64,000 nt of DNA, taken from the IMG/VR virus record IMGVR_UViG_3300020438_000007, positions 62,001 to 126,000 of that record. One strand, given 5' to 3'. Numbering within the stretch: the stretch's first letter is position 1; each line of letters opens with the position of its first letter. Both the position numbers and the translations under genes were made by a program. Below the pieces are notes generated by a model. It saw only the letters and a list, made by a program, of their open reading frames with translations, searched no databases and was not told the origin of the DNA. Of the stretch, positions 41,556 through 53,192 are shown piece by piece.

Positions 41556-42374
41556 TTATCCAATCATGTCTAGGGGTGGCATTGCATATTCTTGCATTAA
41601 CTTCTCATCGAGTTTCTCTAACTCCATGACCGCATCGTCATATAACTGTCTACCATTTAGTTCTAATCCGCCAGGCAATTTAACACCAGTAAACTTAATG
41701 AGATTCTGACCCCATTGTCGTTTTATCAAAGATGTGGTATACTGTTTAAGCCAGACATCATTATATACATTTGATTCGCTTTCGGGATCAACAACTCGAA
41801 AACAATCTATAATCATAAAATGATTCTCAGTTAGTTCATTTACATTGATATCCATGTATAATCTACTATTCTTCTTGTTAAATCTTACCTGAACATCAGG
41901 ATTAAGCATGTAATCAAGAGTTTCCAAGTATGATTTTGTCATGGAATAATTTAATAAATCGACCGCTCCGTAGTAGTATAAATCATTAAGGAAGATTTGA
42001 TATTTAATATTGAACATACCCGCCGAAATGGTGGATGAGTCCATTTTAAATACCTTATTGACTGCAATAACAGTGTCTGGCAGTGGAAGGTAGTTTGCAG
42101 ATTCAGTATAGTCGATAGAAGAAATGCCACCAGCTGTGCTAGATGCAGTTGTAGTAGAAGAAATGCCCAGCATGGTTTGTTTCTCTTCTTTAGTAATCTT
42201 ATGCTTTAAGAATACTCTATCAATACCTTCTCCATGTCTTTCATGAAACAACTGGATGGCATCGTCGATTAGATCATCTATCTGATCATCGTCAACATTG
42301 ATCTCAAGAACAGGTTTTCCTAGTTTCCTAAGAGCATATTCTTTCAATCCATCTTTACTGGTGGGTTTTGCCAT
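41556..42374 (-). CDS. gp13: Neck protein gp13
   Basis: LRKLGKPVLEINV, KRQWGQNLIKF, LPGGLELNG, YAMPP. Confidence 0.94.
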   Translation of the reverse strand: MAKPTSKDGLKEYALRKLGKPVLEINVDDDQIDDLIDDAIQLFHERHGEGIDRVFLKHKITKEEKQTMLGISSTTTASSTAGGISSIDYTESANYLPLPDTVIAVNKVFKMDSSTISAGMFNIKYQIFLNDLYYYGAVDLLNYSMTKSYLETLDYMLNPDVQVRFNKKNSRLYMDINVNELTENHFMIIDCFRVVDPESESNVYNDVWLKQYTTSLIKRQWGQNLIKFTGVKLPGGLELNGRQLYDDAVMELEKLDEKLMQEYAMPPLDMIG

Positions 42375-42411
42375 TCCCTCTATTCATAAGTTCTCCGAAG
42401 TATTTAGTTAT

Positions 42412-43110
42412 ATGAAAAAGTATTTTATTGATGAAGAAGAAACATTTGCAATTAGTGACGAGTTAGGCGCAAGAGTAGAACTCATGGGATGGCAAGAAAT
42501 TCCCATAGTTTACGTTGATAATTTCTACAAGAATCCAGACAAGGTAAGGAATCTAGCACTCAGATGTCCAGGCACAAATAACCCTAGAATATGTGGAGGA
42601 GTGCCTGGAGTTAGGGTAGATATGAATATGAATTTAGATCATATGCACGATGTATTCAAACAAATTGCAAAAAATGTGTATGGACTGACAATAAAAGAAG
42701 ATCCTCAATTTGATCAAGCATGTTTAAATATTCCCTTTTCTGTCAACGTAACTCAATCAAAAGATAGAGTCAAAATACCTCATGTAGACTACCCACCAGA
42801 AACTAAAGGTAGAGGATGGGCTGGGTTAATATATCTAAACAAAGGTAAAGAATGTAAGGGTGGTACTGGGTTTTATACATATAAAGGGCAACAAGTTAAT
42901 CCATTCCAAGATGGAATTTGGACAGAAGATTTTGTTGATGATACTATAGGTCCTTGGGACTTAATACATCTAGCAGAAATGAAGTACAATAGAATGATAT
43001 TGTACCCTGATAATATTCTCCATGGCGCATATGATAAGCCTGGTTTCTTTGAAGGAGAGGACTATAGGTTGGCCCAAGTATTCTTTATACCACTACATTT
43101 TTTCTCATGA
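42412..43110 (+). CDS. DUF6445-family (2OG-Fe(II)-like) protein
   Basis: VDNFYKNPDKVR, PHVD, LIYLN, GGTGFY, MKYNRMILY, HG, RLAQVFF; probable start MKKYF at 42412. Confidence 0.7.
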   Translation: MKKYFIDEEETFAISDELGARVELMGWQEIPIVYVDNFYKNPDKVRNLALRCPGTNNPRICGGVPGVRVDMNMNLDHMHDVFKQIAKNVYGLTIKEDPQFDQACLNIPFSVNVTQSKDRVKIPHVDYPPETKGRGWAGLIYLNKGKECKGGTGFYTYKGQQVNPFQDGIWTEDFVDDTIGPWDLIHLAEMKYNRMILYPDNILHGAYDKPGFFEGEDYRLAQVFFIPLHFFS

Positions 43111-43940
43111 TTATTCTTACAGGATACAAAGGTTTTATAGGTCAAGCATTTGAAAAGAGAATAGATCCAGAAAATCTTTATAGAGTTGAAAAAGATGGTG
43201 CATTTGATTTCATAGATCAATATGATAAGTGGGATGAAGTAGAGTTTATTCTACATCAGGGAGCGCTCTCAAGCACTACTGAGACTGATGTAAATAAAAT
43301 TCACAAATACAATGTAGAGTTTTCAATCAAACTATTTGAGAAAGCAATAGAACACTCTATCCCAGTCAAATATGCTTCAAGTGCATCGGTCTATGGTAAG
43401 ATACATGCTGACTTTGGATACCTAAAAGGAACAATCAATCCATTAAATTTCTACGCACTGAGCAAAGCGACTGTAGATTATTGGGTTACAGATCACATGG
43501 ATGAGTTTAAATTGGTACAAGGATTTAGATACTTCAACGTATATGGAGAAGGTGAAGATCATAAAGGATCTCAAGCAAGTCCTATCAGTAAGTTTACCAA
43601 ACAAGCAAAAGAGAATGATGTCATCAAAATCTTTGAAGACTCAGAATATGCCTTTAGAGATTTTGTATGTGTAGATGATATAGTAGATGTTGTTCTAGAT
43701 AACACAGCAGGGAGTGGCATCTATGATGTTGGAACTGGTAATCCAGTCTCTTTCCAAGAGGTTGCGGAATTGGTTGCTAAGAAAGAAGGGGCAGATATTG
43801 AAGTAATCCCTTTCCCCAAACATCTAGAAGGTAAGTATCAAGAATACACATGTGCAGATACCTCTTGGTATGATCACGATTATAAATCAGTATCCGAATA
43901 TCTTAAATTACCAGCAACAACCACTCTGCCATCACATTGA
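43107..43940 (+). CDS. hldD: ADP-L-glycero-D-manno-heptose 6-epimerase-like SDR
   Basis: TGYKGFIG, HQGALSSTTETD, YASSASVYG, YALSK, FRYFNVYG, EDHKG, GKYQEYTCAD. Confidence 0.8.
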   Translation: MIILTGYKGFIGQAFEKRIDPENLYRVEKDGAFDFIDQYDKWDEVEFILHQGALSSTTETDVNKIHKYNVEFSIKLFEKAIEHSIPVKYASSASVYGKIHADFGYLKGTINPLNFYALSKATVDYWVTDHMDEFKLVQGFRYFNVYGEGEDHKGSQASPISKFTKQAKENDVIKIFEDSEYAFRDFVCVDDIVDVVLDNTAGSGIYDVGTGNPVSFQEVAELVAKKEGADIEVIPFPKHLEGKYQEYTCADTSWYDHDYKSVSEYLKLPATTTLPSH

Positions 43941-44338
43941 TTTTTTGGTACAGAATGTGACTCATCTTGGAAAATGACACACATTCCTTCATGTGGTTGA
44001 ATACTATGTCCGTCAAAGTTTAAAGGAGAACTGCCTGGCGGAGTAGAAACATAGTAAACAAATGAGTAATCATTTTTACCATGTCTATGTTCATAAGCAA
44101 AATCACCGTAATTATATACAGCACCCCATAATTGATATTTTATTTTATCTGAATCTAATTCTAATTTTTCTACAACCCAATCTTTTAACTTAATAAAAGG
44201 TTTAGGATATGTATGGTATCCTGTATGTTTCTCTACTGCAAGATTACTAAACTCGTATGTGTCATGAGGCAAAAAATCTATCCATGACCTCAGTTCTTTG
44301 TTCAAAGATAAATCAGGATAATATACAATGTCAATCAT
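43880..44338 (-). CDS. Putative 2OG-Fe(II) oxygenase (TIGR02466-like)
   Basis: EHRHG..YSFVYYV, EGMCVIF..HSVP, RVVVAGN. Confidence 0.72.
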   Translation of the reverse strand: MIDIVYYPDLSLNKELRSWIDFLPHDTYEFSNLAVEKHTGYHTYPKPFIKLKDWVVEKLELDSDKIKYQLWGAVYNYGDFAYEHRHGKNDYSFVYYVSTPPGSSPLNFDGHSIQPHEGMCVIFQDESHSVPKNQCDGRVVVAGNLRYSDTDL

Positions 44339-44933
44339 GATACATGGGTATATCGTAGTTGTAGTTTATAAAGGCAGTTAGTATATACTTGTCATGTGAT
44401 ATATTTACGTTAGATCCGTGTGGAAACATCCAGTTGCATGGGAATAATAATATTTTACCCATTTCACATTTACATCCAATATTCCAATCAGGGAAGAATG
44501 TTTCTCCTCCCTCATCCACATCATTCAAATATATGATACAAGCAAATAATCTGGATATAGTTCCACCCTGTGCTTGATCTACATGTGTTTTAAATATACC
44601 CTCCCCCTTTGGATATACTCTAATTGTATAATCCAATATTGCAAGATCTGATGATGGTAATACTGGTAATCGTAATCTATAATTCAAATATGCTTTCTGA
44701 ATTATATTAGTCATTAAGTTTGCATACTTATGTCCAGCCTCAAACATAAACTGAGTGCAGTTCTTATGTTCTTTGTTTACTAACTTACCTTTATATTCTC
44801 CGTCTTTAAAATGTTCTACTTTACCATCATCATGTAATTCTTTATGATCCCAGAAATACTTTATTAACTCATCACACTGTTCCTGTGACAACACATCTCT
44901 TTCGACATATATCATGTCGGTGATCTTATCCAT
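44331..44933 (-). CDS. 2OG-Fe(II) oxygenase (prolyl-4-hydroxylase-like)
   Basis: HVD, IIYLNDVDEGGETFF, GKILLFP..WMFPH. Confidence 0.85.
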   Translation of the reverse strand: MDKITDMIYVERDVLSQEQCDELIKYFWDHKELHDDGKVEHFKDGEYKGKLVNKEHKNCTQFMFEAGHKYANLMTNIIQKAYLNYRLRLPVLPSSDLAILDYTIRVYPKGEGIFKTHVDQAQGGTISRLFACIIYLNDVDEGGETFFPDWNIGCKCEMGKILLFPCNWMFPHGSNVNISHDKYILTAFINYNYDIPMYHD

Positions 44934-45333
44934 CTATTAAATCGCCAGGCATAATCCTATGTGAATCTGAATCCATATGTTCTGTACTAAACTCAAACAG
45001 TTCAGTATCTTCCAGTGCAAACATACGATGCTTCAGGCCGATGGGAACATGAAACTTGTCCCCTCTTCTTAATATTGTTATCTCTGCTTTTTCTATATCG
45101 TCATCCCATCCATGAAAGAGTTTGATCTTTCCACTCTGAACAAAAAATACTTCGTCTTTTAATTTATGGAAGTGCCATGAACACTGTTTATCCTTTGCAA
45201 TAAACAATAGTTTACCACAATACTTCTCGCAGTTTGCAATCCATTTTTCATATCCCCATCCCTTCGGCACATATTTAACAGGTTCTGCCGCACGAGCATT
45301 ACGAGGTCTTCTACTTGGTCCAAAAGAAGTCAT
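44926..45333 (-). CDS. Cupin-fold protein (sugar isomerase-like)
   Basis: VPKGWGYE, SWHFHKLKDEVF..SG, HVPIGLKHR. Confidence 0.8.
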   Translation of the reverse strand: MTSFGPSRRPRNARAAEPVKYVPKGWGYEKWIANCEKYCGKLLFIAKDKQCSWHFHKLKDEVFFVQSGKIKLFHGWDDDIEKAEITILRRGDKFHVPIGLKHRMFALEDTELFEFSTEHMDSDSHRIMPGDLIDG

Positions 45334-45646
45334 CAGAGTTTACACCTTTGTCGTCAATAAAGAAATCAGCATGTGGTTTACCTAAGATTAAAGAATGATA
45401 TTTACATCCCCAATCACTAAGTTGTTTTTCCGTAAGATCAAATAACAGAACAGATGCCTTTGTACTTGCATCTGGATCATCACCGAATCGACCCATACCT
45501 CTAGCGGTAAAGTAGGTGATGTTATGACCTTCATCATATAACTTATTTATGATAGCAATCCGATCCTTCCACGGTTCTGCGGTGTGGTAATCCCTTCCTA
45601 CAGTTGGACTACAAATAGTGCCATCAATATCTACACAGTATCTCAT
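45311..45646 (-). CDS. Minimal HAD-superfamily phosphatase
   Basis: VDIDGT motif I, FTAR motif II, GKP..D.FIDDK motifs III/IV. Confidence 0.82.
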   Translation of the reverse strand: MRYCVDIDGTICSPTVGRDYHTAEPWKDRIAIINKLYDEGHNITYFTARGMGRFGDDPDASTKASVLLFDLTEKQLSDWGCKYHSLILGKPHADFFIDDKGVNSDDFFWTK

Positions 45647-45888
45647 ATTATTTCATCTCCTTCCACTTCTTCCATTTCTAATTCATGAACTTGATCATGA
45701 AATACTTCATGTTCTCCGATACGATAGAGATGTTTCATTTCGCCATCTTTATCTTCTCCCTCTCCCAAGTATTCAATATCATCACAACGATTTTCACGCA
45801 ACCACGCTTGCAGTCTGTGGTGCATTAGATCCGCCTTGCCTATCGACATTTTTTCCATTTCCTTCTCCGTATAGTGAGATAATATCAT
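45643..45888 (-). CDS. Hypothetical protein
   Basis: 81-aa ORF; its start may lie downstream of the track start because of the overlap with the kinase gene. Confidence 0.5.
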   Translation of the reverse strand: MILSHYTEKEMEKMSIGKADLMHHRLQAWLRENRCDDIEYLGEGEDKDGEMKHLYRIGEHEVFHDQVHELEMEEVEGDEII

Positions 45889-46627
45889 TCCCAGTTAGAT
45901 AGTAAGCGCCAGGATGTGTGACTGATATTGCAGCAGCTCTATTTGCTAAATCAATAGACTTCCGTATATCCTTTGTTCTTAAAAATTCATAGACTAGAGC
46001 TGCCATAAAGGTATCTCCAGCACCACATACATCAAAAACTTTGACTACCTGTGGGAGAAATTTTAAACCAGCCCATAATGCACCATCATTTCCAAGAGTG
46101 ACAATAAGATGAGTGTCATTAGGTAAATGGTCTTTGTCAAGGTCATTATATTCTTTCTTGTTTATTTTCCAGAATACATTATCTTTATGAAAAAGTCTAC
46201 GCTTCTTAGTGTCTACGAACACTGGTCTGTTAAAATTATGACATAGATTCCATAAATCATCTTCATTAAGGTATCCTTTGTCATAATCTGAAATAACAAT
46301 TGCATCAGGATCCATGTGCAACATTGCCATTTTCAATTCAGCATTTGCGATTCTACCCACCTTTGGAGTTTCATCTAAACGCAAGAACTGATAACCACTG
46401 GTAGTATCTATGAATCTTGTTTTAGTTATCTGTTCCCTCTGCGAAAGTAGAACAGTATTAACACCAAATGCCTTGAGATTCAATTCAGTGTTTGCAGCCA
46501 TACCTGGCCTCTCTTCTATTCTAGTTTGATCTAAAACAGGGACAGGTTGTTCTGGACTCAACCTAGTAGTTTTGCCAAAGACATACTTGTCTGTACACTT
46601 ATCACCTATAACAATTACATTAGCCAC
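45794..46627 (-). CDS. Heptose-7-phosphate kinase (HldE/RfaE domain I, PfkB family)
   Basis: RLSPEQPVPV, GMAANT, ISDYDKG, VDTK, VFDVCGAGDTF. Confidence 0.88.
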   Translation of the reverse strand: MANVIVIGDKCTDKYVFGKTTRLSPEQPVPVLDQTRIEERPGMAANTELNLKAFGVNTVLLSQREQITKTRFIDTTSGYQFLRLDETPKVGRIANAELKMAMLHMDPDAIVISDYDKGYLNEDDLWNLCHNFNRPVFVDTKKRRLFHKDNVFWKINKKEYNDLDKDHLPNDTHLIVTLGNDGALWAGLKFLPQVVKVFDVCGAGDTFMAALVYEFLRTKDIRKSIDLANRAAAISVTHPGAYYLTGNDIISLYGEGNGKNVDRQGGSNAPQTASVVA

Positions 46628-47015
46628 GAATCTTCTTTATGGTATCGGTTGTTGAATAATTTAGACGAGGTAAGAACCTTACTTCTTTGGCAAATTTTCT
46701 GCCAACTACATCTCCACCTTTCCAGTCATCTCCTAACAATAGTATATCAGGAGAGTATAATTTTATCAACCCCTCTAATTCTTTCCTATCGTTAAAGTAA
46801 AAAACTTCATCGATATATTTTATCGCTTGTAACATCGAAACTCTGTCACAAAGGTTATTGATGGGCTTAGTTTCACCCTTATCTTGACGTATCTTCTCAT
46901 CGGTATCTGTTGCTACTATTAGTTTATCTCCTAGAGATTTTCCAACTTTAAATAATTCTATATGGCCTGGGTGTAGAATATCGAATGTTCCATTACACCA
47001 TACTATTCTATTCAT
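46620..47015 (-). CDS. Heptose-1-phosphate adenylyltransferase (HldE/RfaE domain II)
   Basis: NGTFDILHPGH, KGETKPIN, GDDW, YSTT. Confidence 0.85.
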   Translation of the reverse strand: MNRIVWCNGTFDILHPGHIELFKVGKSLGDKLIVATDTDEKIRQDKGETKPINNLCDRVSMLQAIKYIDEVFYFNDRKELEGLIKLYSPDILLLGDDWKGGDVVGRKFAKEVRFLPRLNYSTTDTIKKIRG

Positions 47016-48499
47016 AATGTATCTATGGTCTCACTAAGATAAAGTGTTTGAATAACAGAGTCTGCTTGATTTTTAGGCAGAGTGTTCTCAATATAATTTG
47101 TTAATCTAGGTATGACAGATTGATCTGTTTTCCAATACTCTTTAGGATTGATATCATTTGTCATTAACTGTAGTAACCATACTTGCCAGTTAGTACCATC
47201 AAAGAATGAACCCAACTTTCCTGTTTGAGGAGTTTTTACATTGGGATCTTGAATATATTCCTCTATTATTTTTTGCATTGGTGATTTCTGATATTTAGAT
47301 CTAACATAATCCCAAAACTTGCCTTCCCTTCTACAGTAGGAATAGTGCATATTTACATAATCCACTGCACTCTCATAACTACACTTCATTTTAGCATCAT
47401 AGAGAGGTGATTCTACTCTACTATTAAAGTAACCACCATAAAGACTTTCATCCAAATATTCAACACCTCTAATCATCAGTGCAAGTCCTGTACTTTCTAA
47501 TGGTTCAATAAATCCAGCAGAAAGTCCAATAGGAACTACATTACCCTCCCAGAAGTTTTTGACATATTGAGGTTTCCAATCAAGCAATCTCATTTCATCT
47601 GGTTTGATTCTACCGTTCCAATGATCCGAGAAAGCTTGTCTTACTTCATCTGGATCATTGATATCTCGATTGAAACAATATCCTGTACCTATTCTAGATC
47701 TTGTAGGAATCTTCCATATCCAACCATGTTCCTGTGCAGGGCAAGCAGTATATGGATGTTGTTCTACTCTGTAATCTTCATACTTTACTCTACCAGCAAG
47801 AGCAGCATTTATAAACAATCTATCACCTAGATCAGTATTATCTTTACCAATTAGAAGTTGTTTCCAACCAGTACAATCTACAAATAAATCTCCAGTAATT
47901 ATTGATCCATCATCTAATACCAATTCTTTGATATTGGATTTAGTTATATCGTCTGCTTGTCCATCTCTAATAACATTTACTACATCAGATTGAATATATT
48001 TACAATAAGGTATAGTGTGTTTCATTAAAAACTGCACTAGCTTTCCACAGTCAATCTGAAAGGCGTATGAATCATGAGTATAATCTGTTTCTATTCTATT
48101 TGACCTAGAAGAGACATACATTGGAGAGATATTTTTTATATCATACTTATCTTGAAATGATTGCCATAGGTCATATAAAGGTACTTTAGAATCTCCTACA
48201 CTTGTAAAAGAAAAAGGATGCCAAATTTCTTCATCTTCATGACCCCAGCCAGGAAATAATATACCAGACTTAAATGTTGCATCTACTTCTTTCAACCATT
48301 CTTTAGGTTCATATCCCATTTGTCGCATGACATTTGGGAAACTAAGAAGGGTTGCTTCTCCTACACCAATTCTTTCTGGTTCAGACTTATCGATAATTAC
48401 TACTTCAAAATCTTTTGACCATCTACGAGCAAACCAAGATGCTGTAATCCATCCAGCAGTTCCTCCCCCAACAATAACTAATCTTTTAATTCTTTTCAT
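47012..48499 (-). CDS. Flavin-dependent (tryptophan) halogenase-like protein
   Basis: GGGTAGW, GVGEAT, ATFKSGI (catalytic Lys position), FVDCTG, GWIWKIP, FIEPLESTG. Confidence 0.88.
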   Translation of the reverse strand: MKRIKRLVIVGGGTAGWITASWFARRWSKDFEVVIIDKSEPERIGVGEATLLSFPNVMRQMGYEPKEWLKEVDATFKSGILFPGWGHEDEEIWHPFSFTSVGDSKVPLYDLWQSFQDKYDIKNISPMYVSSRSNRIETDYTHDSYAFQIDCGKLVQFLMKHTIPYCKYIQSDVVNVIRDGQADDITKSNIKELVLDDGSIITGDLFVDCTGWKQLLIGKDNTDLGDRLFINAALAGRVKYEDYRVEQHPYTACPAQEHGWIWKIPTRSRIGTGYCFNRDINDPDEVRQAFSDHWNGRIKPDEMRLLDWKPQYVKNFWEGNVVPIGLSAGFIEPLESTGLALMIRGVEYLDESLYGGYFNSRVESPLYDAKMKCSYESAVDYVNMHYSYCRREGKFWDYVRSKYQKSPMQKIIEEYIQDPNVKTPQTGKLGSFFDGTNWQVWLLQLMTNDINPKEYWKTDQSVIPRLTNYIENTLPKNQADSVIQTLYLSETIDTL

Positions 48500-48541: not shown

Positions 48542-50344
48542 TCAGTTCTTTACTTCGATCATAAGACCATGTTCAGGCAGATAGAGGTATTCTATCAAAC
48601 TGTTTGCAAGAGTCCTCAGAGCGTCATCTAGGGTCTCTACAAGAGGTTCTCCGCCTAGGTTGAAGGATGTATTGAAGATAATAGGACATCCTGTCTTCTC
48701 GTAGAAGGTATTGATTACATTATAGTAATTTGGATTCACTTCTTTAGTAACAGTCTGTATCCTACATGTATCATCAACATGAATAATTGCTGGAATCTTT
48801 TCTTTGATTCCTTCTTGACATTTAACTGCATACATCATAAATGGTGTATCATCCATACCACGAAGATCAAACCATTCATGCACATGTTCTTTCAATATTG
48901 ATCCAGCAAAAGGCCTGAAATATTCACGACGTTTGATGGCATTGACATGATCTTTTCCTTTAGGATCTCTAGGATCGTACATGATTGATCTGTTACCCAA
49001 TGCACGAGGGCCAGCTTCCGACTTACCTTGGAACATTGCAACAATATTTTTCTTCGTAATCAAATCAACTACGTCTTCATCTGTTGCCTCAAAGATCCTA
49101 GTTGCATCATAATAATTTGCAAGGTCTGTAATATACTCGGTATCATATTCATGTACAGGTCCATAGTATAGATCTGTCATGGGTGGATGAACTTTCGTAT
49201 TCTTACTTACTTTCTGGTAGTGCCAGTACGCAGCACCTATCGCTGTTCCAGCATCATTACTTACTGGTTCTACAAATAGATTAATACCTTCATCTTTTAG
49301 TTGTTCAAGATACCAATAGTTTGCAACACAGTTTAATCCATATCCACCAGAGAGAACAACATTCTTTTCTCCACTCATCTTAACTGCCTTACGAATCAAA
49401 TCCAGAACCATCTGTTCTGATTCTATTTGAATAGCATAAGCCATATCTCTACGGTTTTGTAATTTAGTAATATCCTTTACCGATTGCGTATCCATAGGTT
49501 CTCTTAGTTCTACGAATCTACCTTTGTTTACTATAGCACCATTAGGATAGGTAGGTACAATAAGATCTCGATTAGTGGTAGACCAATCACTCATCCCATC
49601 ATGGTCAGTGTAGATATCTGGTATCTTTAAATTCTGTTGACCGTAAGGGAAGAGTCCCATAGTTTTTCCAGCTTCAATAGGAGACCAACCACAATATTGT
49701 GTTACTGCCTCATAAGCTTTTACAATACCAGCAGTGTCATCTAAAATTAATTCATGAGTTCCCTCCTCATCTTCTCTACTAGATGGGAAATTAAATAATC
49801 TTACAGCACCATAAGGACCTCTACCTCCCTGATGTTTGTATAGAGTCTTGAACTTATCTGGATATTCACATTTGATAATCGTTTCTAGTTCCCATGTCAT
49901 CTCCTGTTCACCATCAATCTCCATAGGGATGAATGTTCCAGCACCATCTACAATGACAGATACTGCACTCTCAAATCCTGATCTAAAGAAAGCACAAGAT
50001 GAATGAAGTTTATGATGAATATGACTGTAATCTACAACTTGAGGATGTTTATAGATGTCTGCTTGACGATCAATAAGACCTAGTTTTCTTGCAAGAGAAA
50101 CGTAGATAGGTTCTCCTGTAAAATCATTAGATGCAGCCTGATCTAGAGGTTGTGTATGTGCAACTACAAGATAATCAAGTGTATCGGTGTAATCCAATAT
50201 CTTGATCATGGATGCCAAAGGACCTCCATCATATTTCTTTCTTGATAGTCTCTCCTCTTCAATGGAGAAAACTAGTTGTCCATCTTTCAGTAGGCATACA
50301 CCAGAGTTGTGACCTCTAGCGATTGCAGCAATCCATTGTGTCAT
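48542..50344 (-). CDS. O-carbamoyltransferase (NodU/CmcH/TobZ family)
   Basis: HNSG, EEERLSRKK, HHKLH, SGGYGLNC, NDAG, GPRALGNRS, RREYFRPFA, NTSFN. Confidence 0.92.
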   Translation of the reverse strand: MTQWIAAIARGHNSGVCLLKDGQLVFSIEEERLSRKKYDGGPLASMIKILDYTDTLDYLVVAHTQPLDQAASNDFTGEPIYVSLARKLGLIDRQADIYKHPQVVDYSHIHHKLHSSCAFFRSGFESAVSVIVDGAGTFIPMEIDGEQEMTWELETIIKCEYPDKFKTLYKHQGGRGPYGAVRLFNFPSSREDEEGTHELILDDTAGIVKAYEAVTQYCGWSPIEAGKTMGLFPYGQQNLKIPDIYTDHDGMSDWSTTNRDLIVPTYPNGAIVNKGRFVELREPMDTQSVKDITKLQNRRDMAYAIQIESEQMVLDLIRKAVKMSGEKNVVLSGGYGLNCVANYWYLEQLKDEGINLFVEPVSNDAGTAIGAAYWHYQKVSKNTKVHPPMTDLYYGPVHEYDTEYITDLANYYDATRIFEATDEDVVDLITKKNIVAMFQGKSEAGPRALGNRSIMYDPRDPKGKDHVNAIKRREYFRPFAGSILKEHVHEWFDLRGMDDTPFMMYAVKCQEGIKEKIPAIIHVDDTCRIQTVTKEVNPNYYNVINTFYEKTGCPIIFNTSFNLGGEPLVETLDDALRTLANSLIEYLYLPEHGLMIEVKN

Positions 50345-50348
50345 AATC

Positions 50349-51602
50349 TCAATCTTTCTTTTCTATAGTAATTGCATTTTCTTTATCAGATTTTAACAAA
50401 TTCTTGATTTCAGATTGGAAACCTTTGTTATTCTTTGGCTTCTTTGGTTTTGGAAGTTCCATAGTAAAGGTAGGTTTTGGAGCACCACTCATCGTTGGTA
50501 CACTGTCTCCTTTTCCTGATGGCAACCAATTTGATGTTCCTTGCATTGGTTGTGGTTGTTGCATGGGAGGTGCAATACCTTGTTGTGGTTGTTGAGGTTG
50601 GTTTGGTGGACAAGATTGTCCTTGCTGTTGTTGTGGAGGAACAAAAGTACCTGTGTATGCTTTCGATTTACCCAATCTCTTCCTACAAGATGCAACAATT
50701 TCATCAATATGTTTCTTACTTAGTTCCATCGATTCATCATTGAAACGATCTATTGTTTCGTCCATTGCAATTCTGATAGGAGCATATTCTCTACGTCCAT
50801 TTCCAACATCAATAATATCGAAGTCTTTGTGGCCTGGATAACTAATGTTTTCTGGATATGTGGAACCAATCACAACGGTTGCAGTCTTATCAAATGATCT
50901 TGCAATATGTTGACCCATACTGTCACATCCTAAGAAGTGATCAGCAATCTCAATCACAGCAGCCCAAACTCTCATATCACTAATTTGTGGTCTAGCAATA
51001 GGATATTTACCTTCATTCTCCTCAACAGCAAAGTGATGTTCACTCATTACAATTACTGCGTAATCTTTCTTTAGACTATTGATAATATCTACAGCTCCTG
51101 TAAGAGGCATACTTCTGGAAGTTGGATCTGCAATAAACTCTCCCATCTGTTGAATAGATCTGCCAAATGGTTGAATTACAATTACCTTGTCTTTTTTAGT
51201 AACAGATTTAATTTCTTCAACAATATTATAGGCAGTAATGACCTCTGTTTTATTGAGATTCAATGTGGGTTTAGGAAGTTTTCTAGGTTCTTTTAACCCA
51301 TTAATTGCCATATCATATGCTTGTGCTAAATTGCACTGTTGATTATAATAGTGCCACACTCTATATGGTTCTGGACTTTCGCAGTCCCTTTGTTTAATAT
51401 GTTCTTGGAATACTCTTTTATGCCAATGGTCGTAGACCTTATCATCTAATGTCGGATGTCCTTTAAAGAAGTCAGTTCCGCCCTCACAAATGATAACAAA
51501 ATCATCATGGGTTTCTGCATATTTTTCAAATGCTGGTATTGAACTTATTACTCTCCCTGCCCCACCATTGATGAAGAATGCTTTTGATCTCATAGTTCTC
51601 AT
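50349..51602 (-). CDS. GT9-like (heptosyltransferase-like) glycosyltransferase with Q/P-rich tail
   Basis: GGAGRVISSIP (cf. GGxGD...P), IQPFG, FLGCDSMGQHIA (cf. FIGNDSG.MH.A), VVIGST. Confidence 0.6.
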   Translation of the reverse strand: MRTMRSKAFFINGGAGRVISSIPAFEKYAETHDDFVIICEGGTDFFKGHPTLDDKVYDHWHKRVFQEHIKQRDCESPEPYRVWHYYNQQCNLAQAYDMAINGLKEPRKLPKPTLNLNKTEVITAYNIVEEIKSVTKKDKVIVIQPFGRSIQQMGEFIADPTSRSMPLTGAVDIINSLKKDYAVIVMSEHHFAVEENEGKYPIARPQISDMRVWAAVIEIADHFLGCDSMGQHIARSFDKTATVVIGSTYPENISYPGHKDFDIIDVGNGRREYAPIRIAMDETIDRFNDESMELSKKHIDEIVASCRKRLGKSKAYTGTFVPPQQQQGQSCPPNQPQQPQQGIAPPMQQPQPMQGTSNWLPSGKGDSVPTMSGAPKPTFTMELPKPKKPKNNKGFQSEIKNLLKSDKENAITIEKKD

Positions 51603-51620
51603 AATTCCTATAGTATATAG

Positions 51621-52280
51621 TCACATAAAAAATACCTGTGCCAGACGAGGATGTTCCTTAAACATCTTTCGATTTATGTCTGCTCCGTGGGTACATTCAG
51701 CTTCATACATTATCATTCTATTATATTTCATTGGACATGTAAACTGTATATCTTTTCGTATATTGTAATCACCATAGGCATGATCTGTCAGATATTTGTA
51801 AAAATCTGTTCCGCCTTCGCACTCCTCATCTTTGTTCAAATAAACTAGAGCGGCCCAACTAGAATTATCGTCTTTGTGATGAGTGTAACAATAGACAGTC
51901 TTAGTAAATCTTTCATTTATATCTTTGTTGGTAGTATGGTTGACCCAGAACTTTTGATTATCCCATCTATAATCAAACATTCCTTCACTAAATTGAATAT
52001 TAGTCCATTCCGAATGTTGGCAAAGTTCTTTGAAAACTGGTTTCAAAATCTCAATCATATCTGGTCTATCTTCAACAACTCTCGTTCCTATAAGACCGCC
52101 ACAATGTTCTTTGTCACCTGTTCTATCGCATGATAGAGCGTAATCCCTGACTTCATCAGGGTTCTTGTAGAAGTCATCTACTACAAATACTTTTCTCCAC
52201 TGGTAACCAGCGTCACTAAATCTATCGTAGTCATAACATTTTTTTATAAGAGAAATCTGAACAGGATTTATTTCAAACAT
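51621..52280 (-). CDS. DUF6445-family (2OG-Fe(II)-like) protein
   Basis: VDDFYKNPDEVR, HHKD, LVYLN, GGTDFY, MKYNRMIMY, RLAQVFF; paralogue of 42412..43110. Confidence 0.7.
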   Translation of the reverse strand: MFEINPVQISLIKKCYDYDRFSDAGYQWRKVFVVDDFYKNPDEVRDYALSCDRTGDKEHCGGLIGTRVVEDRPDMIEILKPVFKELCQHSEWTNIQFSEGMFDYRWDNQKFWVNHTTNKDINERFTKTVYCYTHHKDDNSSWAALVYLNKDEECEGGTDFYKYLTDHAYGDYNIRKDIQFTCPMKYNRMIMYEAECTHGADINRKMFKEHPRLAQVFFM

Positions 52281-52285
52281 GTAAT

Positions 52286-52313
52286 AAAAAAGATCCCCTT
52301 ATTAGGAGGATCT
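52286..52313 (-). terminator. Rho-independent terminator
   Basis: AGATCCTCC-TAATAA-GGGGATCT + T-tract. Confidence 0.7.
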
Positions 52314-52342
52314 TAGTAGGATATTTTATATATAAAAGTTTT

Positions 52343-53128
52343 TTAGATTGAATTAGGAGGTTGCCATGCTGTTGCTCCATCTGCATCGGATTCTGGGTCA
52401 GCAGGTGGATTTGCAAATCCAGGCTCAAATGGGAACATCAAGTCAGCAAAGTTTGGATGAACTCCAGCTGCAATCATCTTATTAGGAAGGTCCCTTAGTG
52501 CTTGGCGGTATGCTTTCCACTGGTCTTTAAGTGCATCAGGCATATCTTCTGCAAGTTGACCATCACTATTAGAAAGAACATTGTCTCTGTGACCTCTAAC
52601 ATGTTCCCATGTCTTGTCCTCATCAACACCGTTTAACTTCTGTCTAGGTGTGAAGTTGCCAATGGTAATATCGTTGGGCCCAGCAGAGCCAGGGTTTGCA
52701 ACTCTGATACTATCATAGTCAAAAAAGTCATCAGCGAATATAGTTGAAGAAAATGTAAACTGAGGATACACAGATCCATCTACCACTGGAGAGCCAGGAT
52801 GGTTCGTGTCTACACCAGCACCTCTGTCTTCTTCTTTCTCGTTTACAACAGGTCCTCTTAACTGACAGATAAGTGTATGTAAATCACTTGATGCACAGTC
52901 AACCTCGTACCATTGTACAACGTCAGCTGGTTTTGGACGACCATCTGCGATATCATCCTCTGTTAGAGGACCATATACTTCTCTTCCTTCTGCATTAATT
53001 TGCAGAAAAATCTTGTCTGGACCATCATAAGTTTGGTCTCTTTGGTTTCCATCAGATTTTGAGTGATCTGTAAGGAAAGCGTTCGGAAGATCTAACTTCC
53101 AGTTATGTGAAATAATTTTTGTTGCCAT
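52343..53128 (-). CDS. Tail fibre assembly chaperone-like protein
   Basis: C-terminal WEHVRGHRDNVLSNSD....WKAYRQALRDLP typical of tail assembly chaperones. Confidence 0.72.
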   Translation of the reverse strand: MATKIISHNWKLDLPNAFLTDHSKSDGNQRDQTYDGPDKIFLQINAEGREVYGPLTEDDIADGRPKPADVVQWYEVDCASSDLHTLICQLRGPVVNEKEEDRGAGVDTNHPGSPVVDGSVYPQFTFSSTIFADDFFDYDSIRVANPGSAGPNDITIGNFTPRQKLNGVDEDKTWEHVRGHRDNVLSNSDGQLAEDMPDALKDQWKAYRQALRDLPNKMIAAGVHPNFADLMFPFEPGFANPPADPESDADGATAWQPPNSI

Positions 53129-53160: not shown

Positions 53161-53168
53161 TATTTATA
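53161..53168 (-). promoter_or_regulatory. T4-type late promoter TATAAATA
   Basis: Exact consensus fused to a terminator T-tract, upstream of the chaperone gene. Confidence 0.78.
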
Positions 53169-53192
53169 AAAAAAGAGGGTCATAGACCCTCT
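53168..53192 (-). terminator. Rho-independent terminator after the Cys-rich triplet
   Basis: AGAGGGTC-TAT-GACCCTCT + T-tract. Confidence 0.75.

What the first reader, a model, noticed from the sequence alone, without database searches (positions are those of the whole stretch)
44926..45646. Cupin and minimal HAD as possible non-orthologous replacements of GmhA and GmhB
ADP-heptose synthesis needs isomerase (GmhA), kinase, phosphatase (GmhB), adenylyltransferase and epimerase. The last, second and fourth steps are present canonically; no SIS-fold GmhA or GmhB is in the window. The same operon instead has a cupin and a 111-aa DxDGT phosphatase. Cupin phosphomannose isomerases catalyse the analogous ketose-to-manno-aldose reaction, so these could complete the pathway with new enzyme families.
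Basis: inference. Interest (0 to 1): 0.6.

Follow-up and report, generated by a model that had tools for sequence, protein, structure and literature searches.

The report
Cyanophage heptose pathway with substitute enzymes
A marine cyanophage carries a five-gene sugar-nucleotide module in which a small metal-binding cupin and a 111-residue HAD phosphatase most likely take the places of the usual GmhA and GmhB enzymes of ADP-heptose synthesis, letting the virus make a sugar that most of its hosts cannot make; this rests on computation only.

Summary
The window belongs to a 230.7-kb T4-like cyanomyovirus close to Synechococcus phage S-SSM7. On the minus strand lie a nucleotidyltransferase (best match RfaE domain II), a PfkB kinase (best match RfaE domain I), a 111-aa HAD with all four catalytic motifs, and a 135-aa cupin with a full HxH…E…H metal site. 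An HldD-like epimerase converges on them. No SIS protein or GmhB occurs in this phage genome or in five related phage genomes.

The HAD is 38% identical to phage HY126 AfhF, a characterised D-arabinose-1,5-bisphosphate 5-phosphatase. That is the same type of step as GmhB, so the family is not new.

The cupin family's closest solved relatives by profile are D-lyxose/D-mannose ketol-isomerases (E 2e-11), and family-specific residues are shared. Natural fusions join this cupin to RfaE-I kinases, RfaE-II transferases and the HAD. In 31 of 34 loci it sits with a HAD, a kinase and a transferase, including HddA/HddC-type enzymes.

About 80% of sampled host-family genomes lack GmhA and GmhB. The heptose identity and the enzyme activities remain untested. 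I rate this a new variant of a known pathway.

The parts
46620..47015 (-). Sugar-1-phosphate nucleotidyltransferase (131 aa), HIGH/cytidylyltransferase-like, closest to RfaE/HldE domain II (proposed step 4: heptose-1-P to ADP-heptose)
   Evidence: PF01467 E 2e-18. TIGR02199 rfaE_dom_II scores 102 bits (E 2e-29) against 78 bits for TagD, below the 181.5 cut-off. PDB relatives are cytidylyltransferases, among them 5x9q (molecule name 'Putative cytidylyltransferase', E 1e-15; I take it for Burkholderia HldC from memory).
45794..46627 (-). PfkB-family anomeric sugar-phosphate kinase (277 aa), closest to RfaE/HldE domain I (proposed step 2: heptose-7-P to heptose-1,7-bisphosphate)
   Evidence: PF00294 E 2e-19. 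TIGR02198 scores 132 bits (E 2e-38), below the 345 cut-off; the next best hit, ribokinase, scores 51 bits. Best PDB hit is the D-beta-D-heptose 7-phosphate kinase HldA, 4e84, E 1e-12.
45643..45888 (-). 81-aa ORF of unknown function (phrog_2020) between HAD and kinase, overlapping the kinase 3' end by 95 nt; present only in the S-SSM7-like subgroup
   Evidence: phrog_2020 E 1e-20. Annotated in S-SSM7 as T4-like gene cluster GC328. Found in the closest loci only.
45311..45646 (-). Capless 111-aa HAD phosphatase of the AfhF / EcbF-BcbF / 1xpj family (proposed step 3, the GmhB role: removal of the 7-phosphate from heptose-1,7-bisphosphate)
   Evidence: HAD motifs I-IV are invariant. phmmer to 9iqw (phage HY126 AfhF, D-arabinose-1,5-diphosphate phosphatase) gives E 6e-16 at 38% identity, and 9iqw is also the top Foldseek hit. 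TIGR01689 gives E 1.6e-5. GmhB structures appear only at E 0.02-0.04. The gene is adjacent to the cupin in 28 of 34 loci.
44926..45333 (-). 135-aa single-domain metal-binding cupin, a compact relative of D-lyxose/D-mannose ketol-isomerases (proposed step 1, the GmhA role: sedoheptulose-7-P to D-glycero-D-manno-heptose-7-P)
   Evidence: Cupin_2/Cupin_1. AF2 model pLDDT 86. Family profile A3 against the PDB: D-lyxose isomerases 2y0o at 2e-11 and 7nzo at 1e-10, with shared N-x3-Y-C-x-K, H-x-H...K-x-E-T-F and E-F/M-S motifs. Structural ties with Thermococcus cupin PMI (Z 15.3, rmsd 1.6 A) and CapF (Z 15.6). Fusions to an RfaE-I kinase, an RfaE-II transferase and the HAD.
43107..43940 (+). HldD-like SDR (277 aa), convergent with the operon (proposed step 5: ADP-D,D-heptose to ADP-L,D-heptose 6-epimerase)
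   Evidence: TIGR02197 scores 209 bits (E 8e-62) against 45 bits for GalE. [quoted passage not shown] The equivalents of S116, Y140, K144 and K178 are conserved in the printed alignment. About 24 residues of the N-terminal dinucleotide-binding region are missing.
48542..50344 (-). NodU/CmcH-type O-carbamoyltransferase (600 aa), a conserved upstream neighbour (T4-like gene cluster GC303); probable tailoring enzyme for the sugar or glycan
   Evidence: Carbam_trans_N and Carbam_trans_C, E 1e-59. Conserved next to the module in P-SSM2, S-CAM1, S-SSM7 and Sf-FS3.
50349..51602 (-). 417-aa protein (T4-like gene cluster GC302) with a Pro/Gln-rich tail; a possible divergent GT9-type heptosyltransferase
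   Evidence: No Pfam hit. Nearest ESM-Atlas clusters are viral, and one set is named ADP-heptose:LPS heptosyltransferase with PF01075 in 22% of members. hhalign to E. coli WaaC and WaaF matches only the C-terminal GT9 motif, E 0.007 and 0.014 with probability under 6%. Suggestive only.

Best explanation
The window is part of a T4-like cyanomyovirus. Five genes form a self-contained module that most likely converts the Calvin-cycle and pentose-phosphate intermediate sedoheptulose-7-phosphate into ADP-glycero-manno-heptose.

Proposed steps:
1. The 135-aa cupin, a metal-dependent aldose-ketose isomerase related to D-lyxose/D-mannose isomerases, makes D-glycero-D-manno-heptose-7-P. This is the GmhA role and is inferred.
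2. The PfkB kinase phosphorylates O1. Homology to HldE domain I and HldA is shown; the substrate is inferred.
3. The 111-aa HAD of the AfhF family removes the distal 7-phosphate. This is the GmhB role. The family's analogous activity on arabinose-1,5-bisphosphate is published; the substrate here is inferred.
4. The small nucleotidyltransferase adds AMP. Homology to HldE domain II is shown.
5. The HldD-like SDR epimerises C6. Conservation of the catalytic residues is shown.

A carbamoyltransferase and a possible GT9-like transferase upstream would then use and decorate the sugar. The target (host envelope or virion) is unknown. The phage needs its own first and third enzymes because most picocyanobacterial hosts have neither GmhA nor GmhB.
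For: Phage identity and module conservation:
- The region is about 84% identical in DNA to S-SSM7.
- The same transferase, kinase, HAD, cupin and epimerase set occurs in P-SSM2, S-CAM1, S-SSM7, Sf-FS3, P-TIM68, S-T4 and S-SM2.

Absence of the usual enzymes:
- No SIS, SIS_2 or GmhB in the 230.7-kb genome.
- No SIS or SIS_2 in five related phage genomes.

HAD:
- Catalytic motifs are invariant.
- The closest solved relative is AfhF, the D-arabinose-1,5-diphosphate phosphatase of phage HY126, at E 6e-16 and 38% identity.
- Its role in a pathway of isomerase, anomeric kinase, phosphatase and nucleotidyltransferase is described in PMC13326640, citing He et al. 2026.

Cupin:
- The metal site and about 14 further residues are invariant across 53 divergent members.
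- The best PDB profile hits are D-lyxose isomerases (2e-11 and 1e-10), and the alignment covers family-specific motifs. RmlC-type epimerases score E 0.2 and CapF 3.5e-4.
- The family member P0287 passes Pfam's gathering thresholds for Lyx_isomer and MannoseP_isomer.
- Structural Z is 15.3 at rmsd 1.6 A to 113-aa Thermococcus cupin phosphomannose isomerases.

Fusions among the top 150 of 4957 family representatives:
- Two to rfaE_dom_I kinases of about 329 bits, one in each gene order.
- Four to rfaE_dom_II transferases.
- One to an EcbF/AfhF-type HAD.

Neighbourhoods (34 loci with at least 4 kb on both sides):
- HAD in 32, kinase in 32, transferase in 33, all three in 31, SIS in 1.
- In phages Bellamy and SynMITS9220M01 the cupin lies between an HddA-like GHMP kinase (279 bits) and an HddC-like transferase. 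It therefore travels with both non-homologous versions of the heptose pathway.

Heptose identity:
- The SDR's top four PDB hits are all HldD, and S116, Y140, K144 and K178 are conserved.
- The kinase's best PDB hit is HldA.

Hosts:
- GmhA-like genes occur in 29 of 151 sampled host-family genomes and GmhB-like genes in 20 of 151.
- The LPS of Synechococcus WH8102 and CC9311 has no heptose (PMC4515613).
Against: - No enzyme in the module has been assayed. The kinase, transferase and epimerase all score below NCBIfam's trusted cut-offs, so the sugar could differ.
- Structure comparison does not discriminate function. CapF, KdgF, DddK, PMI and D-lyxose isomerase all tie at Z 14-15.6, and the 3-His-1-Glu site also occurs in dioxygenases.
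- The profile margin of D-lyxose isomerase over unrelated cupins is only about two orders of magnitude (2e-11 against 4e-9).
- Known D-lyxose isomerases act on unphosphorylated sugars.
- Two loci (SynMITS9220M01 and the MAG contig L018) carry a SIS GmhA-like gene near the cupin, so the two are not strictly exclusive.
- One locus (L086) has the cupin alone among tail genes.
- Some fusion proteins could be gene-calling artefacts on short metagenomic contigs.
- The HAD model is of modest confidence (pLDDT 71.5).
- The GT9 assignment of the upstream gene is weak.
Confidence: 0.55

Rival explanations
1. The enzyme logic is the same (cupin isomerase, anomeric kinase, AfhF-type distal phosphatase, nucleotidyltransferase) but the sugar is not a heptose. 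One option is fructose-6-P to mannose-6-P to mannose-1,6-bisphosphate to mannose-1-P to NDP-mannose. Another is a pentose, such as xylulose-5-P to lyxose-5-P or ribulose-5-P to arabinose-5-P, as in the RB69/HY126 UDP-arabinose pathway.
For: The characterised relative of the HAD works on a pentose bisphosphate. D-lyxose isomerases and cupin PMIs work on C5 and C6 sugars. Xu5P, F6P and S7P share the same C3/C4 configuration (established sugar chemistry). The kinase, transferase and SDR are below the equivalog cut-offs. Several related clusters add aldolase/epimerase-like and transketolase-like genes, which hints at other sugar chemistry.
Against: The three homologous enzymes each match heptose enzymes best. 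rfaE_dom_I scores 132 bits against 51 for ribokinase, and HldA is the top PDB hit for the kinase. The SDR's top four PDB hits are all HldD, with the HldD-specific second base K178 conserved, and a C6 epimerase has no stereocentre to act on in a hexose or pentose. In Bellamy the neighbours are HddA- and HddC-like, again heptose enzymes.
Confidence: 0.2
2. The cupin acts late, on the nucleotide-sugar. It would be a keto-sugar epimerase or ketoisomerase working with the adjacent SDR, like the CapF cupin domain or the RmlC-like GDP-heptose epimerases of Campylobacter. The first isomerisation would then be left to a host GmhA.
For: CapF's C-terminal cupin is the nominally best structural match (Foldseek E 3e-8, Z 15.6). 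The cupin gene abuts the SDR gene in P-SSM2 and S-CAM1. In Bellamy it is followed by RmlD-like and GMD-like SDRs, as in 6-deoxyheptose pathways. Some loci have a SIS GmhA-like gene as well.
Against: The sequence profile favours ketol-isomerases (2e-11) over CapF (3.5e-4) and RmlC-type epimerases (0.2). The residues shared with D-lyxose isomerases extend beyond the generic metal motif. No 4,6-dehydratase that could supply a keto-sugar was seen in the window's cluster. About 80% of host-family genomes sampled have no GmhA, and none of six phage genomes with the module has one, so the pathway would have no entry step. The tightest linkage is to the HAD (adjacent in 28 of 34 loci, overlapping genes, a natural fusion), which is an early-step enzyme.
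Confidence: 0.12
3. The cupin is an oxygenase or hydroxylase of a phage secondary-metabolite pathway. This is the published reading of the S-SSM6a cluster (Iyer et al. [quoted passage not shown]
For: PMC7824862 makes this proposal for the closest relatives of this window. A tryptophan-halogenase-like gene, a carbamoyltransferase and four 2OG-Fe oxygenase-like genes do flank the module here. 3-His-1-Glu cupins include dioxygenases. PHROG names the family 'cysteine dioxygenase'.
Against: The cupin stays with the HAD, kinase and transferase in phages whose clusters show no halogenase or methylase (P-SSM2, S-CAM1, P-TIM68). It is fused to kinase, transferase or HAD, with no oxygenase or halogenase partner identified. 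Its closest relatives are sugar isomerases. Cysteine dioxygenase scores only E 0.1.
Confidence: 0.08

Closest known systems
Canonical ADP-L-glycero-beta-D-manno-heptose pathway (GmhA, HldE or HldA+HldC, GmhB, HldD) of Gram-negative bacteria
   Same: There are five activities in the same order, encoded by five clustered genes. The kinase, transferase and epimerase are homologues of HldE-I/HldA, HldE-II/HldC and HldD, and the HldD catalytic residues are conserved.
   Different: The isomerase slot holds a cupin instead of the SIS-fold GmhA. The phosphatase slot holds a capless AfhF-type HAD instead of the HAD-IIIA GmhB. Kinase and transferase are separate and shortened. The module is encoded by a virus whose hosts mostly lack the pathway.
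AfhF of E. coli phage HY126 (PDB 9IQW) and its orthologues RB69 gp51 and DLP3 gp81: D-arabinofuranose-1,5-bisphosphate 5-phosphatase of the UDP-arabinose pathway
   Same: Same protein family (38% identity, E 6e-16, about 110-130 aa, capless HAD). Same place in a pathway of isomerase, anomeric kinase, distal phosphatase and nucleotidyltransferase. Both are phage-encoded.
   Different: The partners differ. HY126 and RB69 use a SIS arabinose-5-P isomerase and an APH-kinase/NTP-transferase fusion (AfhE) and put the sugar on DNA. The cyanophage uses a cupin, RfaE-like enzymes and an HldD-like epimerase, and the presumed substrate is a heptose bisphosphate.
D-lyxose/D-mannose ketol-isomerases (Pfam PF07385; B. 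subtilis YdaE 2Y0O, Thermofilum 7NZO, E. coli Z5688 3KMH) and minimal cupin phosphomannose isomerases of Thermococcus (7ZVM, 7ZVY)
   Same: Cupin fold with the HxH...E...H metal site. The N-x3-Y-C-x-K, K-x-E-T-F and E-F/M-S motifs are shared. These enzymes produce the manno/lyxo C2 configuration needed for D-glycero-D-manno-heptose. The Thermococcus PMIs show that a roughly 110-aa cupin can isomerise a phosphosugar.
   Different: The phage protein lacks the two long loop insertions of D-lyxose isomerases and has its own conserved K-G-W-G-x-E and D-S-x-R motifs. It misses the Pfam threshold (15.3 against 20.8 bits). The presumed substrate is a C7 ketose phosphate, which is not reported for these families in the papers I could search.
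CapF (Cap5F) C-terminal cupin domain of Staphylococcus aureus
   Same: Nominally the best structural match (Z 15.6). It is a metal-binding cupin working on a sugar pathway next to an SDR.
   Different: CapF acts on a UDP-4-keto sugar and is fused to its SDR. Sequence-profile similarity is much weaker (E 3.5e-4) than to the ketol-isomerases.
Cyanophage 'secondary-metabolite' cluster of S-SSM6a as described by Iyer et al. 2021 (PMC7824862)
   Same: These are the same genes in the closest relatives of this window. The HAD is read there as a sugar phosphatase too, and cupin sugar isomerases, PfkB kinases and HIGH nucleotidyltransferases are mentioned for cyanophage sugar clusters in general.
   Different: That paper calls this cupin a hydroxylating enzyme and does not propose an ADP-heptose pathway or a GmhA/GmhB replacement.

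Membership tests
GmhA (sedoheptulose-7-phosphate isomerase, SIS fold; TIGR00441, PF13580) | SIS (flavodoxin-like) fold and a match to the gmhA/SIS_2 models | tested here: not met
   The candidate is an all-beta cupin. No SIS or SIS_2 match exists anywhere in the phage genome. It can only be an analogue, not a member.
GmhB (D,D-heptose-1,7-bisphosphate phosphatase, HAD-IIIA; TIGR00213, TIGR01662) | HAD core motifs I-IV | tested here: met
   D6, D8, T10, T47, K90, D98 and D99 are invariant in 20 homologues.
GmhB (D,D-heptose-1,7-bisphosphate phosphatase, HAD-IIIA; TIGR00213, TIGR01662) | Match to the GmhB_yaeD or HAD-IIIA subfamily models | tested here: not met
   TIGR00213 gave no match in the genome at E<=1. 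TIGR01662 scores 13.5 bits against a 44.6 cut-off. GmhB structures rank only at Foldseek E 0.02-0.04.
AfhF / EcbF-BcbF / 1xpj family of capless sugar-bisphosphate HAD phosphatases (TIGR01689; PDB 9IQW) | Significant full-length sequence similarity to AfhF | tested here: met
   phmmer E 6.4e-16 over residues 2-107, 38% identity, and the top Foldseek hit. There are 394 phage records in the family, including RB69-like phages. phrog_1238 E 2e-31.
AfhF / EcbF-BcbF / 1xpj family of capless sugar-bisphosphate HAD phosphatases (TIGR01689; PDB 9IQW) | Score above NCBIfam's TIGR01689 cut-off | tested here: not met
   24.8 bits against a cut-off of 162. It is a divergent branch, not an equivalog.
AfhF / EcbF-BcbF / 1xpj family of capless sugar-bisphosphate HAD phosphatases (TIGR01689; PDB 9IQW) | Mg-dependent hydrolysis of the distal phosphate of a sugar 1,omega-bisphosphate | not testable with these tools
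   This needs an enzyme assay. The activity is published for AfhF only (PMC13326640, citing He et al. 2026).
Cupin superfamily, metal-binding class | Two cupin motifs giving His-x-His-x4-Glu and a later His as metal ligands, on a double-stranded beta-helix | tested here: met
   H54, H56, E61 and H102 are invariant. Cupin_1 scores 23.9 bits, above its 22 cut-off. The AF2 model is all-beta with pLDDT 86.
D-lyxose/D-mannose ketol-isomerase family (Pfam PF07385) | Profile similarity and family-specific motifs beyond the generic cupin core | tested here: met
   A3 profile against 2y0o gives E 2.2e-11 and against 7nzo 1.1e-10, over 92-96 of 122 positions. The N..YC.K, K.ETF, PP..H and E(F/M)S motifs align.
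D-lyxose/D-mannose ketol-isomerase family (Pfam PF07385) | Score above Pfam's gathering threshold | tested here: not met
   The window protein scores 15.3 bits against 20.8. 17 of 20 close homologues give sub-threshold hits. The family member P0287 passes, with 27.2 bits.
D-lyxose/D-mannose ketol-isomerase family (Pfam PF07385) | Aldose-ketose isomerase activity | not testable with these tools
   This needs an assay with S7P, F6P, Xu5P and Ru5P.
[quoted passage not shown] | Catalytic Ser116, Tyr140, Lys144 and second base Lys178 (E. coli numbering) | tested here: met
   All four are conserved in the phmmer alignment to 1eq2, E 1.3e-42.
[quoted passage not shown] | Score above the equivalog cut-off, with a full-length Rossmann domain | tested here: not met
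   209 bits against 274.6. About 24 residues of the N-terminal NADP-binding region are absent.
HldE domain I / HldA kinase (TIGR02198) and HldE domain II / HldC adenylyltransferase (TIGR02199) | Best match to the family, and score above the cut-off | tested here: inconclusive
   Both are best hits (132 and 102 bits) but lie far below the cut-offs of 345 and 181.5. The kinase's best PDB hit is HldA. The transferase's PDB hits mix cytidylyltransferases with 5x9q, which I take for HldC.
Glycosyltransferase family 9 (heptosyltransferases; PF01075), for the upstream 417-aa protein | Match to the GT9 profile or to WaaC/WaaF | tested here: inconclusive
   No Pfam hit even at E<=10. hhalign to WaaC and WaaF matches only the C-terminal motif, E 0.007 and 0.014 with probability under 6%. 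Neighbouring ESM-Atlas clusters are partly annotated PF01075.

The most novel reading that the evidence does not exclude
A compact cupin related to D-lyxose isomerases would be a previously unrecognised class of sedoheptulose-7-phosphate isomerase. The family has about 5,000 sequence clusters, mostly from marine viruses. Together with an AfhF-type HAD it would give cyanophages a complete, host-independent route from a Calvin-cycle intermediate to ADP-heptose. This would happen in hosts whose own envelopes contain no heptose. The product would then be transferred by a divergent GT9-like enzyme and carbamoylated, on the host surface or on the virion.
Probability: 0.45. Interest if true: 0.7.

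Novelty: new variant of a known kind. Interest (0 to 1): 0.6.

Why it matters
If correct, this is a clean case of non-orthologous displacement at two of the five steps of a textbook pathway. GmhA and GmhB are also studied as antibiotic targets.

It would add a new catalytic solution, a metal-dependent cupin, for S7P isomerisation.

It would correct database names now spread over hundreds of phage genomes. The HAD is called 'phosphoheptose isomerase' and the cupin 'cysteine dioxygenase'.

It would also show that abundant ocean viruses divert a central carbon-fixation intermediate into a sugar that is foreign to most of their hosts. That bears on how cyanophages remodel host surfaces or their own particles.

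The AfhF link suggests a general viral design for making rare nucleotide-sugars without mutases: isomerase, anomeric kinase, distal phosphatase, nucleotidyltransferase.

Tried and rejected
- **Fold comparison for the cupin.** Foldseek and VIA-align place CapF, KdgF, DddK, PMI, D-lyxose isomerase and oxalate decarboxylase within one Z unit of each other. Fold alone does not assign a function.
- **Cellular contexts.** The pattern-based scan of genome contigs returned only 11 marine MAG contigs with 54-65% identical cupins and phage-like neighbourhoods, probably mis-binned phage DNA. It gave no independent cellular context.
- **MAG with a kinase-cupin fusion (G001).** It has no SIS_2, but it also has no AfhF-type HAD and only a weak transferase hit. 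Its completeness is unknown, so the result is inconclusive.
- **GT9 membership of the upstream 417-aa protein.** There is no Pfam or PDB sequence hit, and hhalign gives only a local motif match to WaaC and WaaF. I keep this as a suggestion only.
- **Promoters and terminators.** The T4 late-promoter motif TATAAATA is not enriched (6 found, 3.9 expected). None lies inside the module, and sigma-70-like sites are at the chance level.
- **Searching papers by the PDB code 9IQW** found nothing relevant. The identity of the entry came from the Foldseek title and from PMC13326640.
- **'Cysteine dioxygenase' (PHROG/RefSeq name)** is rejected for the cupin: the match is E 0.1 to CDO against 2e-11 to D-lyxose isomerase.
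- **'Phosphoheptose isomerase' (PHROG/RefSeq name)** is rejected for the HAD, which is a HAD phosphatase.
- **Not used:** the reads tools, complex prediction and any alternative genetic code.
Full report
**What is there.** The span 44926-45646 holds two overlapping minus-strand genes. One is a 135-aa cupin (44926-45333) and the other a 111-aa HAD (45311-45646). Upstream on the same strand lie an 81-aa ORF of unknown function, a PfkB kinase (45794-46627) and a cytidylyltransferase-like protein (46620-47015). Further upstream are a tryptophan-halogenase-like gene, a carbamoyltransferase and a 417-aa protein. Downstream are two 2OG-Fe(II) oxygenases and, convergent on the plus strand, an SDR (43107-43940).

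The window is bases 62001-126000 of a 230,739-bp virus record rated 99% complete. The region is about 84% identical in DNA to Synechococcus phage S-SSM7, a T4-like cyanomyovirus of the Kyanoviridae.

**The three homologous steps.** The kinase's best NCBIfam hit is rfaE_dom_I (132 bits, E 2e-38; ribokinase is next at 51 bits). The transferase's best hit is rfaE_dom_II (102 bits; TagD 78 bits). The SDR's best hit is heptose_epim (209 bits; GalE 45 bits). All three lie below the curated cut-offs.

Against solved structures, the kinase's best hit is the heptose-7-phosphate kinase HldA (4e84, E 1e-12). The transferase hits cytidylyltransferases, among them 5x9q, which I take from memory to be Burkholderia HldC. 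[quoted passage not shown] In the printed alignment the equivalents of Ser116, Tyr140, Lys144 and the HldD-specific Lys178 are conserved. These enzymes are therefore divergent and split, not 'canonical'. They still point to a heptose, chiefly because a C6 epimerase needs a seven-carbon sugar.

**No GmhA or GmhB.** PF13580 (SIS_2), PF01380 (SIS) and TIGR00213 (GmhB) find nothing at E<=1 in the whole phage genome, although the same searches ring in the control genomes. SIS and SIS_2 are also absent from the complete genomes of S-SSM7, P-TIM68, P-SSM2, S-CAM1 and S-SM2, which all carry the module.

**The HAD.** All four HAD motifs are invariant in 20 homologues. Pfam does not recognise the protein. 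PHROG files it in phrog_1238 under the name 'phosphoheptose isomerase', which is a misnomer.

Its closest solved relative is 9IQW (phmmer E 6e-16, 38% identity, and the top Foldseek hit). The entry's title is 'phage HY126 encoded D-arabinose 1,5-diphosphate phosphatase AfhF'. Next comes the uncharacterised 1xpj, while GmhB structures appear only at E 0.02-0.04. PMC13326640, citing He et al. 2026, describes AfhF as a Mg-dependent enzyme. It removes the 5-phosphate from arabinofuranose-1,5-bisphosphate in a pathway of isomerase, anomeric kinase, phosphatase and nucleotidyltransferase.

By tblastn the family occurs in 394 phage records. These include the RB69-, JS98- and Acinetobacter-type T4-like phages at 35-45% identity. 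The HAD is therefore a member of a family already shown to do the GmhB type of step on another sugar. The 'new enzyme family' label is not.

**The cupin.** It has the canonical metal site (H54, H56, E61, H102). Across 53 relatives of 36-56% identity, G27, E29, N34, Y38, C39, K41, G68, E114, S116 and D123 are also invariant. K24, W26, S52, K59, T117, S124 and R126 are nearly so. The AF2 model is a confident single cupin barrel (pLDDT 86).

Structure comparison does not discriminate function. CapF's cupin (Z 15.6), Thermococcus cupin phosphomannose isomerases (Z 15.3, rmsd 1.6 A), KdgF and D-lyxose isomerases (Z 14.7, with the highest identity at 24%) are tied.

Sequence profiles discriminate better:
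- The A3 profile's best PDB hits are the D-lyxose isomerases 2y0o (E 2e-11) and 7nzo (E 1e-10). The alignments cover 92-96 of 122 positions.
- These alignments include motifs outside the generic cupin core: N-x3-Y-C-x-K, K-x-E-T-F, P-P-x3-H and E-F/M-S.
- Quercetinase-type cupins follow at about 4e-9, a PMI at 1e-5, CapF at 3.5e-4 and RmlC-type epimerases at 0.2.
- 17 of 20 close homologues give sub-threshold Pfam Lyx_isomer hits. The family member P0287 passes the gathering thresholds of both Lyx_isomer and MannoseP_isomer.

D-lyxose/D-mannose isomerases create the manno/lyxo configuration at C2. That is what S7P to D-glycero-D-manno-heptose-7-P requires.

**Genomic linkage.** A profile search of 1.84 billion representative proteins found 4957 family members at E<=1e-3. 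Among the best 150 are several natural fusions:
- two with rfaE_dom_I kinases of 328 and 330 bits, one in each gene order;
- four with rfaE_dom_II transferases;
- one with an EcbF/AfhF-type HAD;
- one with a NUDIX domain.

By tblastn the cupin occurs in 35 phage records, all from cyanophages or marine viruses. This is nearly the same set as the 34 records holding the kinase.

I then examined 34 loci with at least 4 kb on both sides of the cupin. They came from phage records, IMG/VR contigs and MAG contigs. A HAD lies within 4 kb in 32 loci and is adjacent in 28. A kinase is present in 32, a transferase in 33 and all three in 31. An HldD-like SDR is present in 23 and a SIS protein in 1.

In phages Bellamy and SynMITS9220M01 the cupin sits between an HddA-like GHMP kinase (NF049969, 279 bits, full length) and an HddC-like transferase. 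RmlD-like and GMD-like SDRs follow. The cupin-plus-HAD pair therefore accompanies both non-homologous versions of the heptose activation pathway. The steps those versions share are exactly the GmhA and GmhB steps.

**Hosts.** I reached a picocyanobacterial genome (G002) through a D1 protein named 'Synechococcaceae cyanobacterium ELA263'. I then sampled 151 genomes of its family. The tool gives no taxon names for these genomes, but their sizes are 1.6-3.9 Mb.
- GmhA-like genes occur in 29 genomes. None reaches the curated cut-off.
- GmhB-like genes occur in 20 genomes. 19 of these also have GmhA, and the pairs I checked lie within a few kb of each other.
- About 80% of the sample therefore has neither.

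A review states that the LPS of Synechococcus WH8102 and CC9311 contains neither heptose nor Kdo (PMC4515613). A phage that wants heptose in such hosts must bring the first and third enzymes itself.

**Counter-evidence and limits.**
- Nothing here is an enzyme assay.
- The profile margin over unrelated cupins is about two orders of magnitude.
- Known D-lyxose isomerases use unphosphorylated sugars.
- SynMITS9220M01 and the MAG contig L018 carry a second HddA-like kinase with a true SIS GmhA-like gene near the cupin. The two isomerase types are therefore not strictly exclusive.
- One locus has the cupin alone among tail genes.
- Some fusions come from short metagenomic contigs, where gene-calling artefacts are possible.
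- Iyer et al. 2021 (PMC7824862) read the very cluster of S-SSM6a as a secondary-metabolite system. They call the cupin a hydroxylating enzyme. I consider this less likely, because the cupin stays with the sugar-activation genes in phages whose clusters show no halogenase and its relatives are isomerases.

**Downstream use.** The carbamoyltransferase and the 417-aa protein (T4-like gene cluster GC302) are conserved next to the module in several phages. The 417-aa protein resembles viral ESM-Atlas clusters that are partly annotated as heptosyltransferases. It shares only the C-terminal GT9 motif with WaaC and WaaF, at weak significance. The module often lies beside tail-fibre genes. Whether the sugar ends up on the host envelope or on the virion is open.

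**Verdict.** I put about 0.55 on the full statement (cupin as S7P isomerase, HAD as heptose-1,7-bisphosphate 7-phosphatase, product ADP-heptose). I put about 0.2 on the same logic with another sugar, about 0.12 on a late nucleotide-sugar role for the cupin, and about 0.08 on an oxygenase role.

I found no paper proposing a cupin-type S7P isomerase. The design of the pathway and the HAD's chemistry have precedents, so I rate this a new variant of a known kind, with interest 0.6.

No step needed to be referred.

Noticed in passing
window 45311-45646 and 44926-45333; L001-L011: Database names are misleading and widely propagated. The HAD family (phrog_1238, RefSeq) is called 'phosphoheptose isomerase'. 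The cupin (phrog_7851) is called 'cysteine dioxygenase'. The 131-aa transferase alone is called 'bifunctional heptose 7-phosphate kinase/heptose 1-phosphate adenyltransferase'. The HAD name recurs across many of the 394 phage records, including RB69-like phages where the protein is the AfhF orthologue.
   Followed up: partly
window 47012-48499, 48542-50344, 43880-44933, 42298-43110, 51621-52280: A tryptophan-halogenase-like flavoprotein (PF04820, E 1e-82), a NodU/CmcH carbamoyltransferase and four 2OG-Fe(II)/DUF6445 oxygenase-like genes surround the sugar module. Iyer et al. 2021 predicted a halogenated secondary metabolite for this cluster in S-SSM6a. The substrate of the halogenase is unknown.
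   Followed up: partly
window 50349-51602: This 417-aa protein (T4-like gene cluster GC302) has a Pro/Gln-rich, then Lys-rich C-terminal tail and no Pfam hit. It may be a very divergent GT9 heptosyltransferase: an ESM-Atlas neighbour cluster is so named, and the C-terminal GT9 motif aligns with WaaC and WaaF.
   Followed up: partly
window 45643-45888: An 81-aa ORF (phrog_2020, unknown function) is wedged between HAD and kinase and overlaps the kinase's low-complexity 3' end by 95 nt. It is present only in the S-SSM7-like subgroup. In S-SSM7 itself a PF05175 methyltransferase is also inserted here.
   Followed up: no
L011:12577-14027 (SynMITS9220M01) and L018 (MAG contig PBYV01000054.1): A second module, made of an HddA-like GHMP kinase plus a true SIS GmhA-like protein (168 aa; TIGR00441 47 bits), lies within 1.4-6.6 kb of the cupin. 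These phages thus appear to carry two isomerase-kinase pairs, possibly for two different sugars.
   Followed up: partly
L002 (P-TIM68), L005 (S-SM2), contig of P0259: A variant of the cluster adds a transketolase-like ThDP enzyme (E1_dh + Transket_pyr), a Zn alcohol dehydrogenase and, in P-TIM68, a FabG-like reductase. In one metagenomic contig this goes with a transferase-cupin fusion. S-SM2 and Bellamy add a class II aldolase/epimerase-like gene. These hint at further tailoring or a branched or extended sugar.
   Followed up: no
L013-L023 (genome contigs): Contigs binned as Pelagibacter, Planctomycetaceae, Euryarchaeota, Woesearchaeota, Verrucomicrobiales and other MAGs carry cupin, HAD, kinase and transferase genes 54-65% identical to the phage's. 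They are most likely mis-binned cyanophage DNA in public MAGs.
   Followed up: partly
L012 (GCA_964404345.1, contig CAYOJS010000018.1) 8001-9287: A 1.4-Mb MAG encodes an RfaE-I kinase-cupin fusion. It lies next to GT2 and PMT_2 glycosyltransferases, radical-SAM enzymes, a carbamoyltransferase and an IS66 transposase. No SIS_2 match was found in that genome.
   Followed up: partly
L086:3966-4346: In one IMG/VR contig the cupin stands alone between a tail-fibre-like DUF7483 protein, a tail assembly chaperone and a 1291-aa protein, with no sugar genes within 4 kb. The sugar module also often abuts tail-fibre genes in P-SSM2 and S-CAM1.
   Followed up: no
window 53161-53192: A terminator-like hairpin is followed directly by the only TATAAATA (T4 late-promoter-like) motif near the cluster. 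It lies upstream of the gene at 52343-53128. A second terminator-like hairpin at 52290-52314 precedes the oxygenase gene that heads the minus-strand block containing the module.
   Followed up: no
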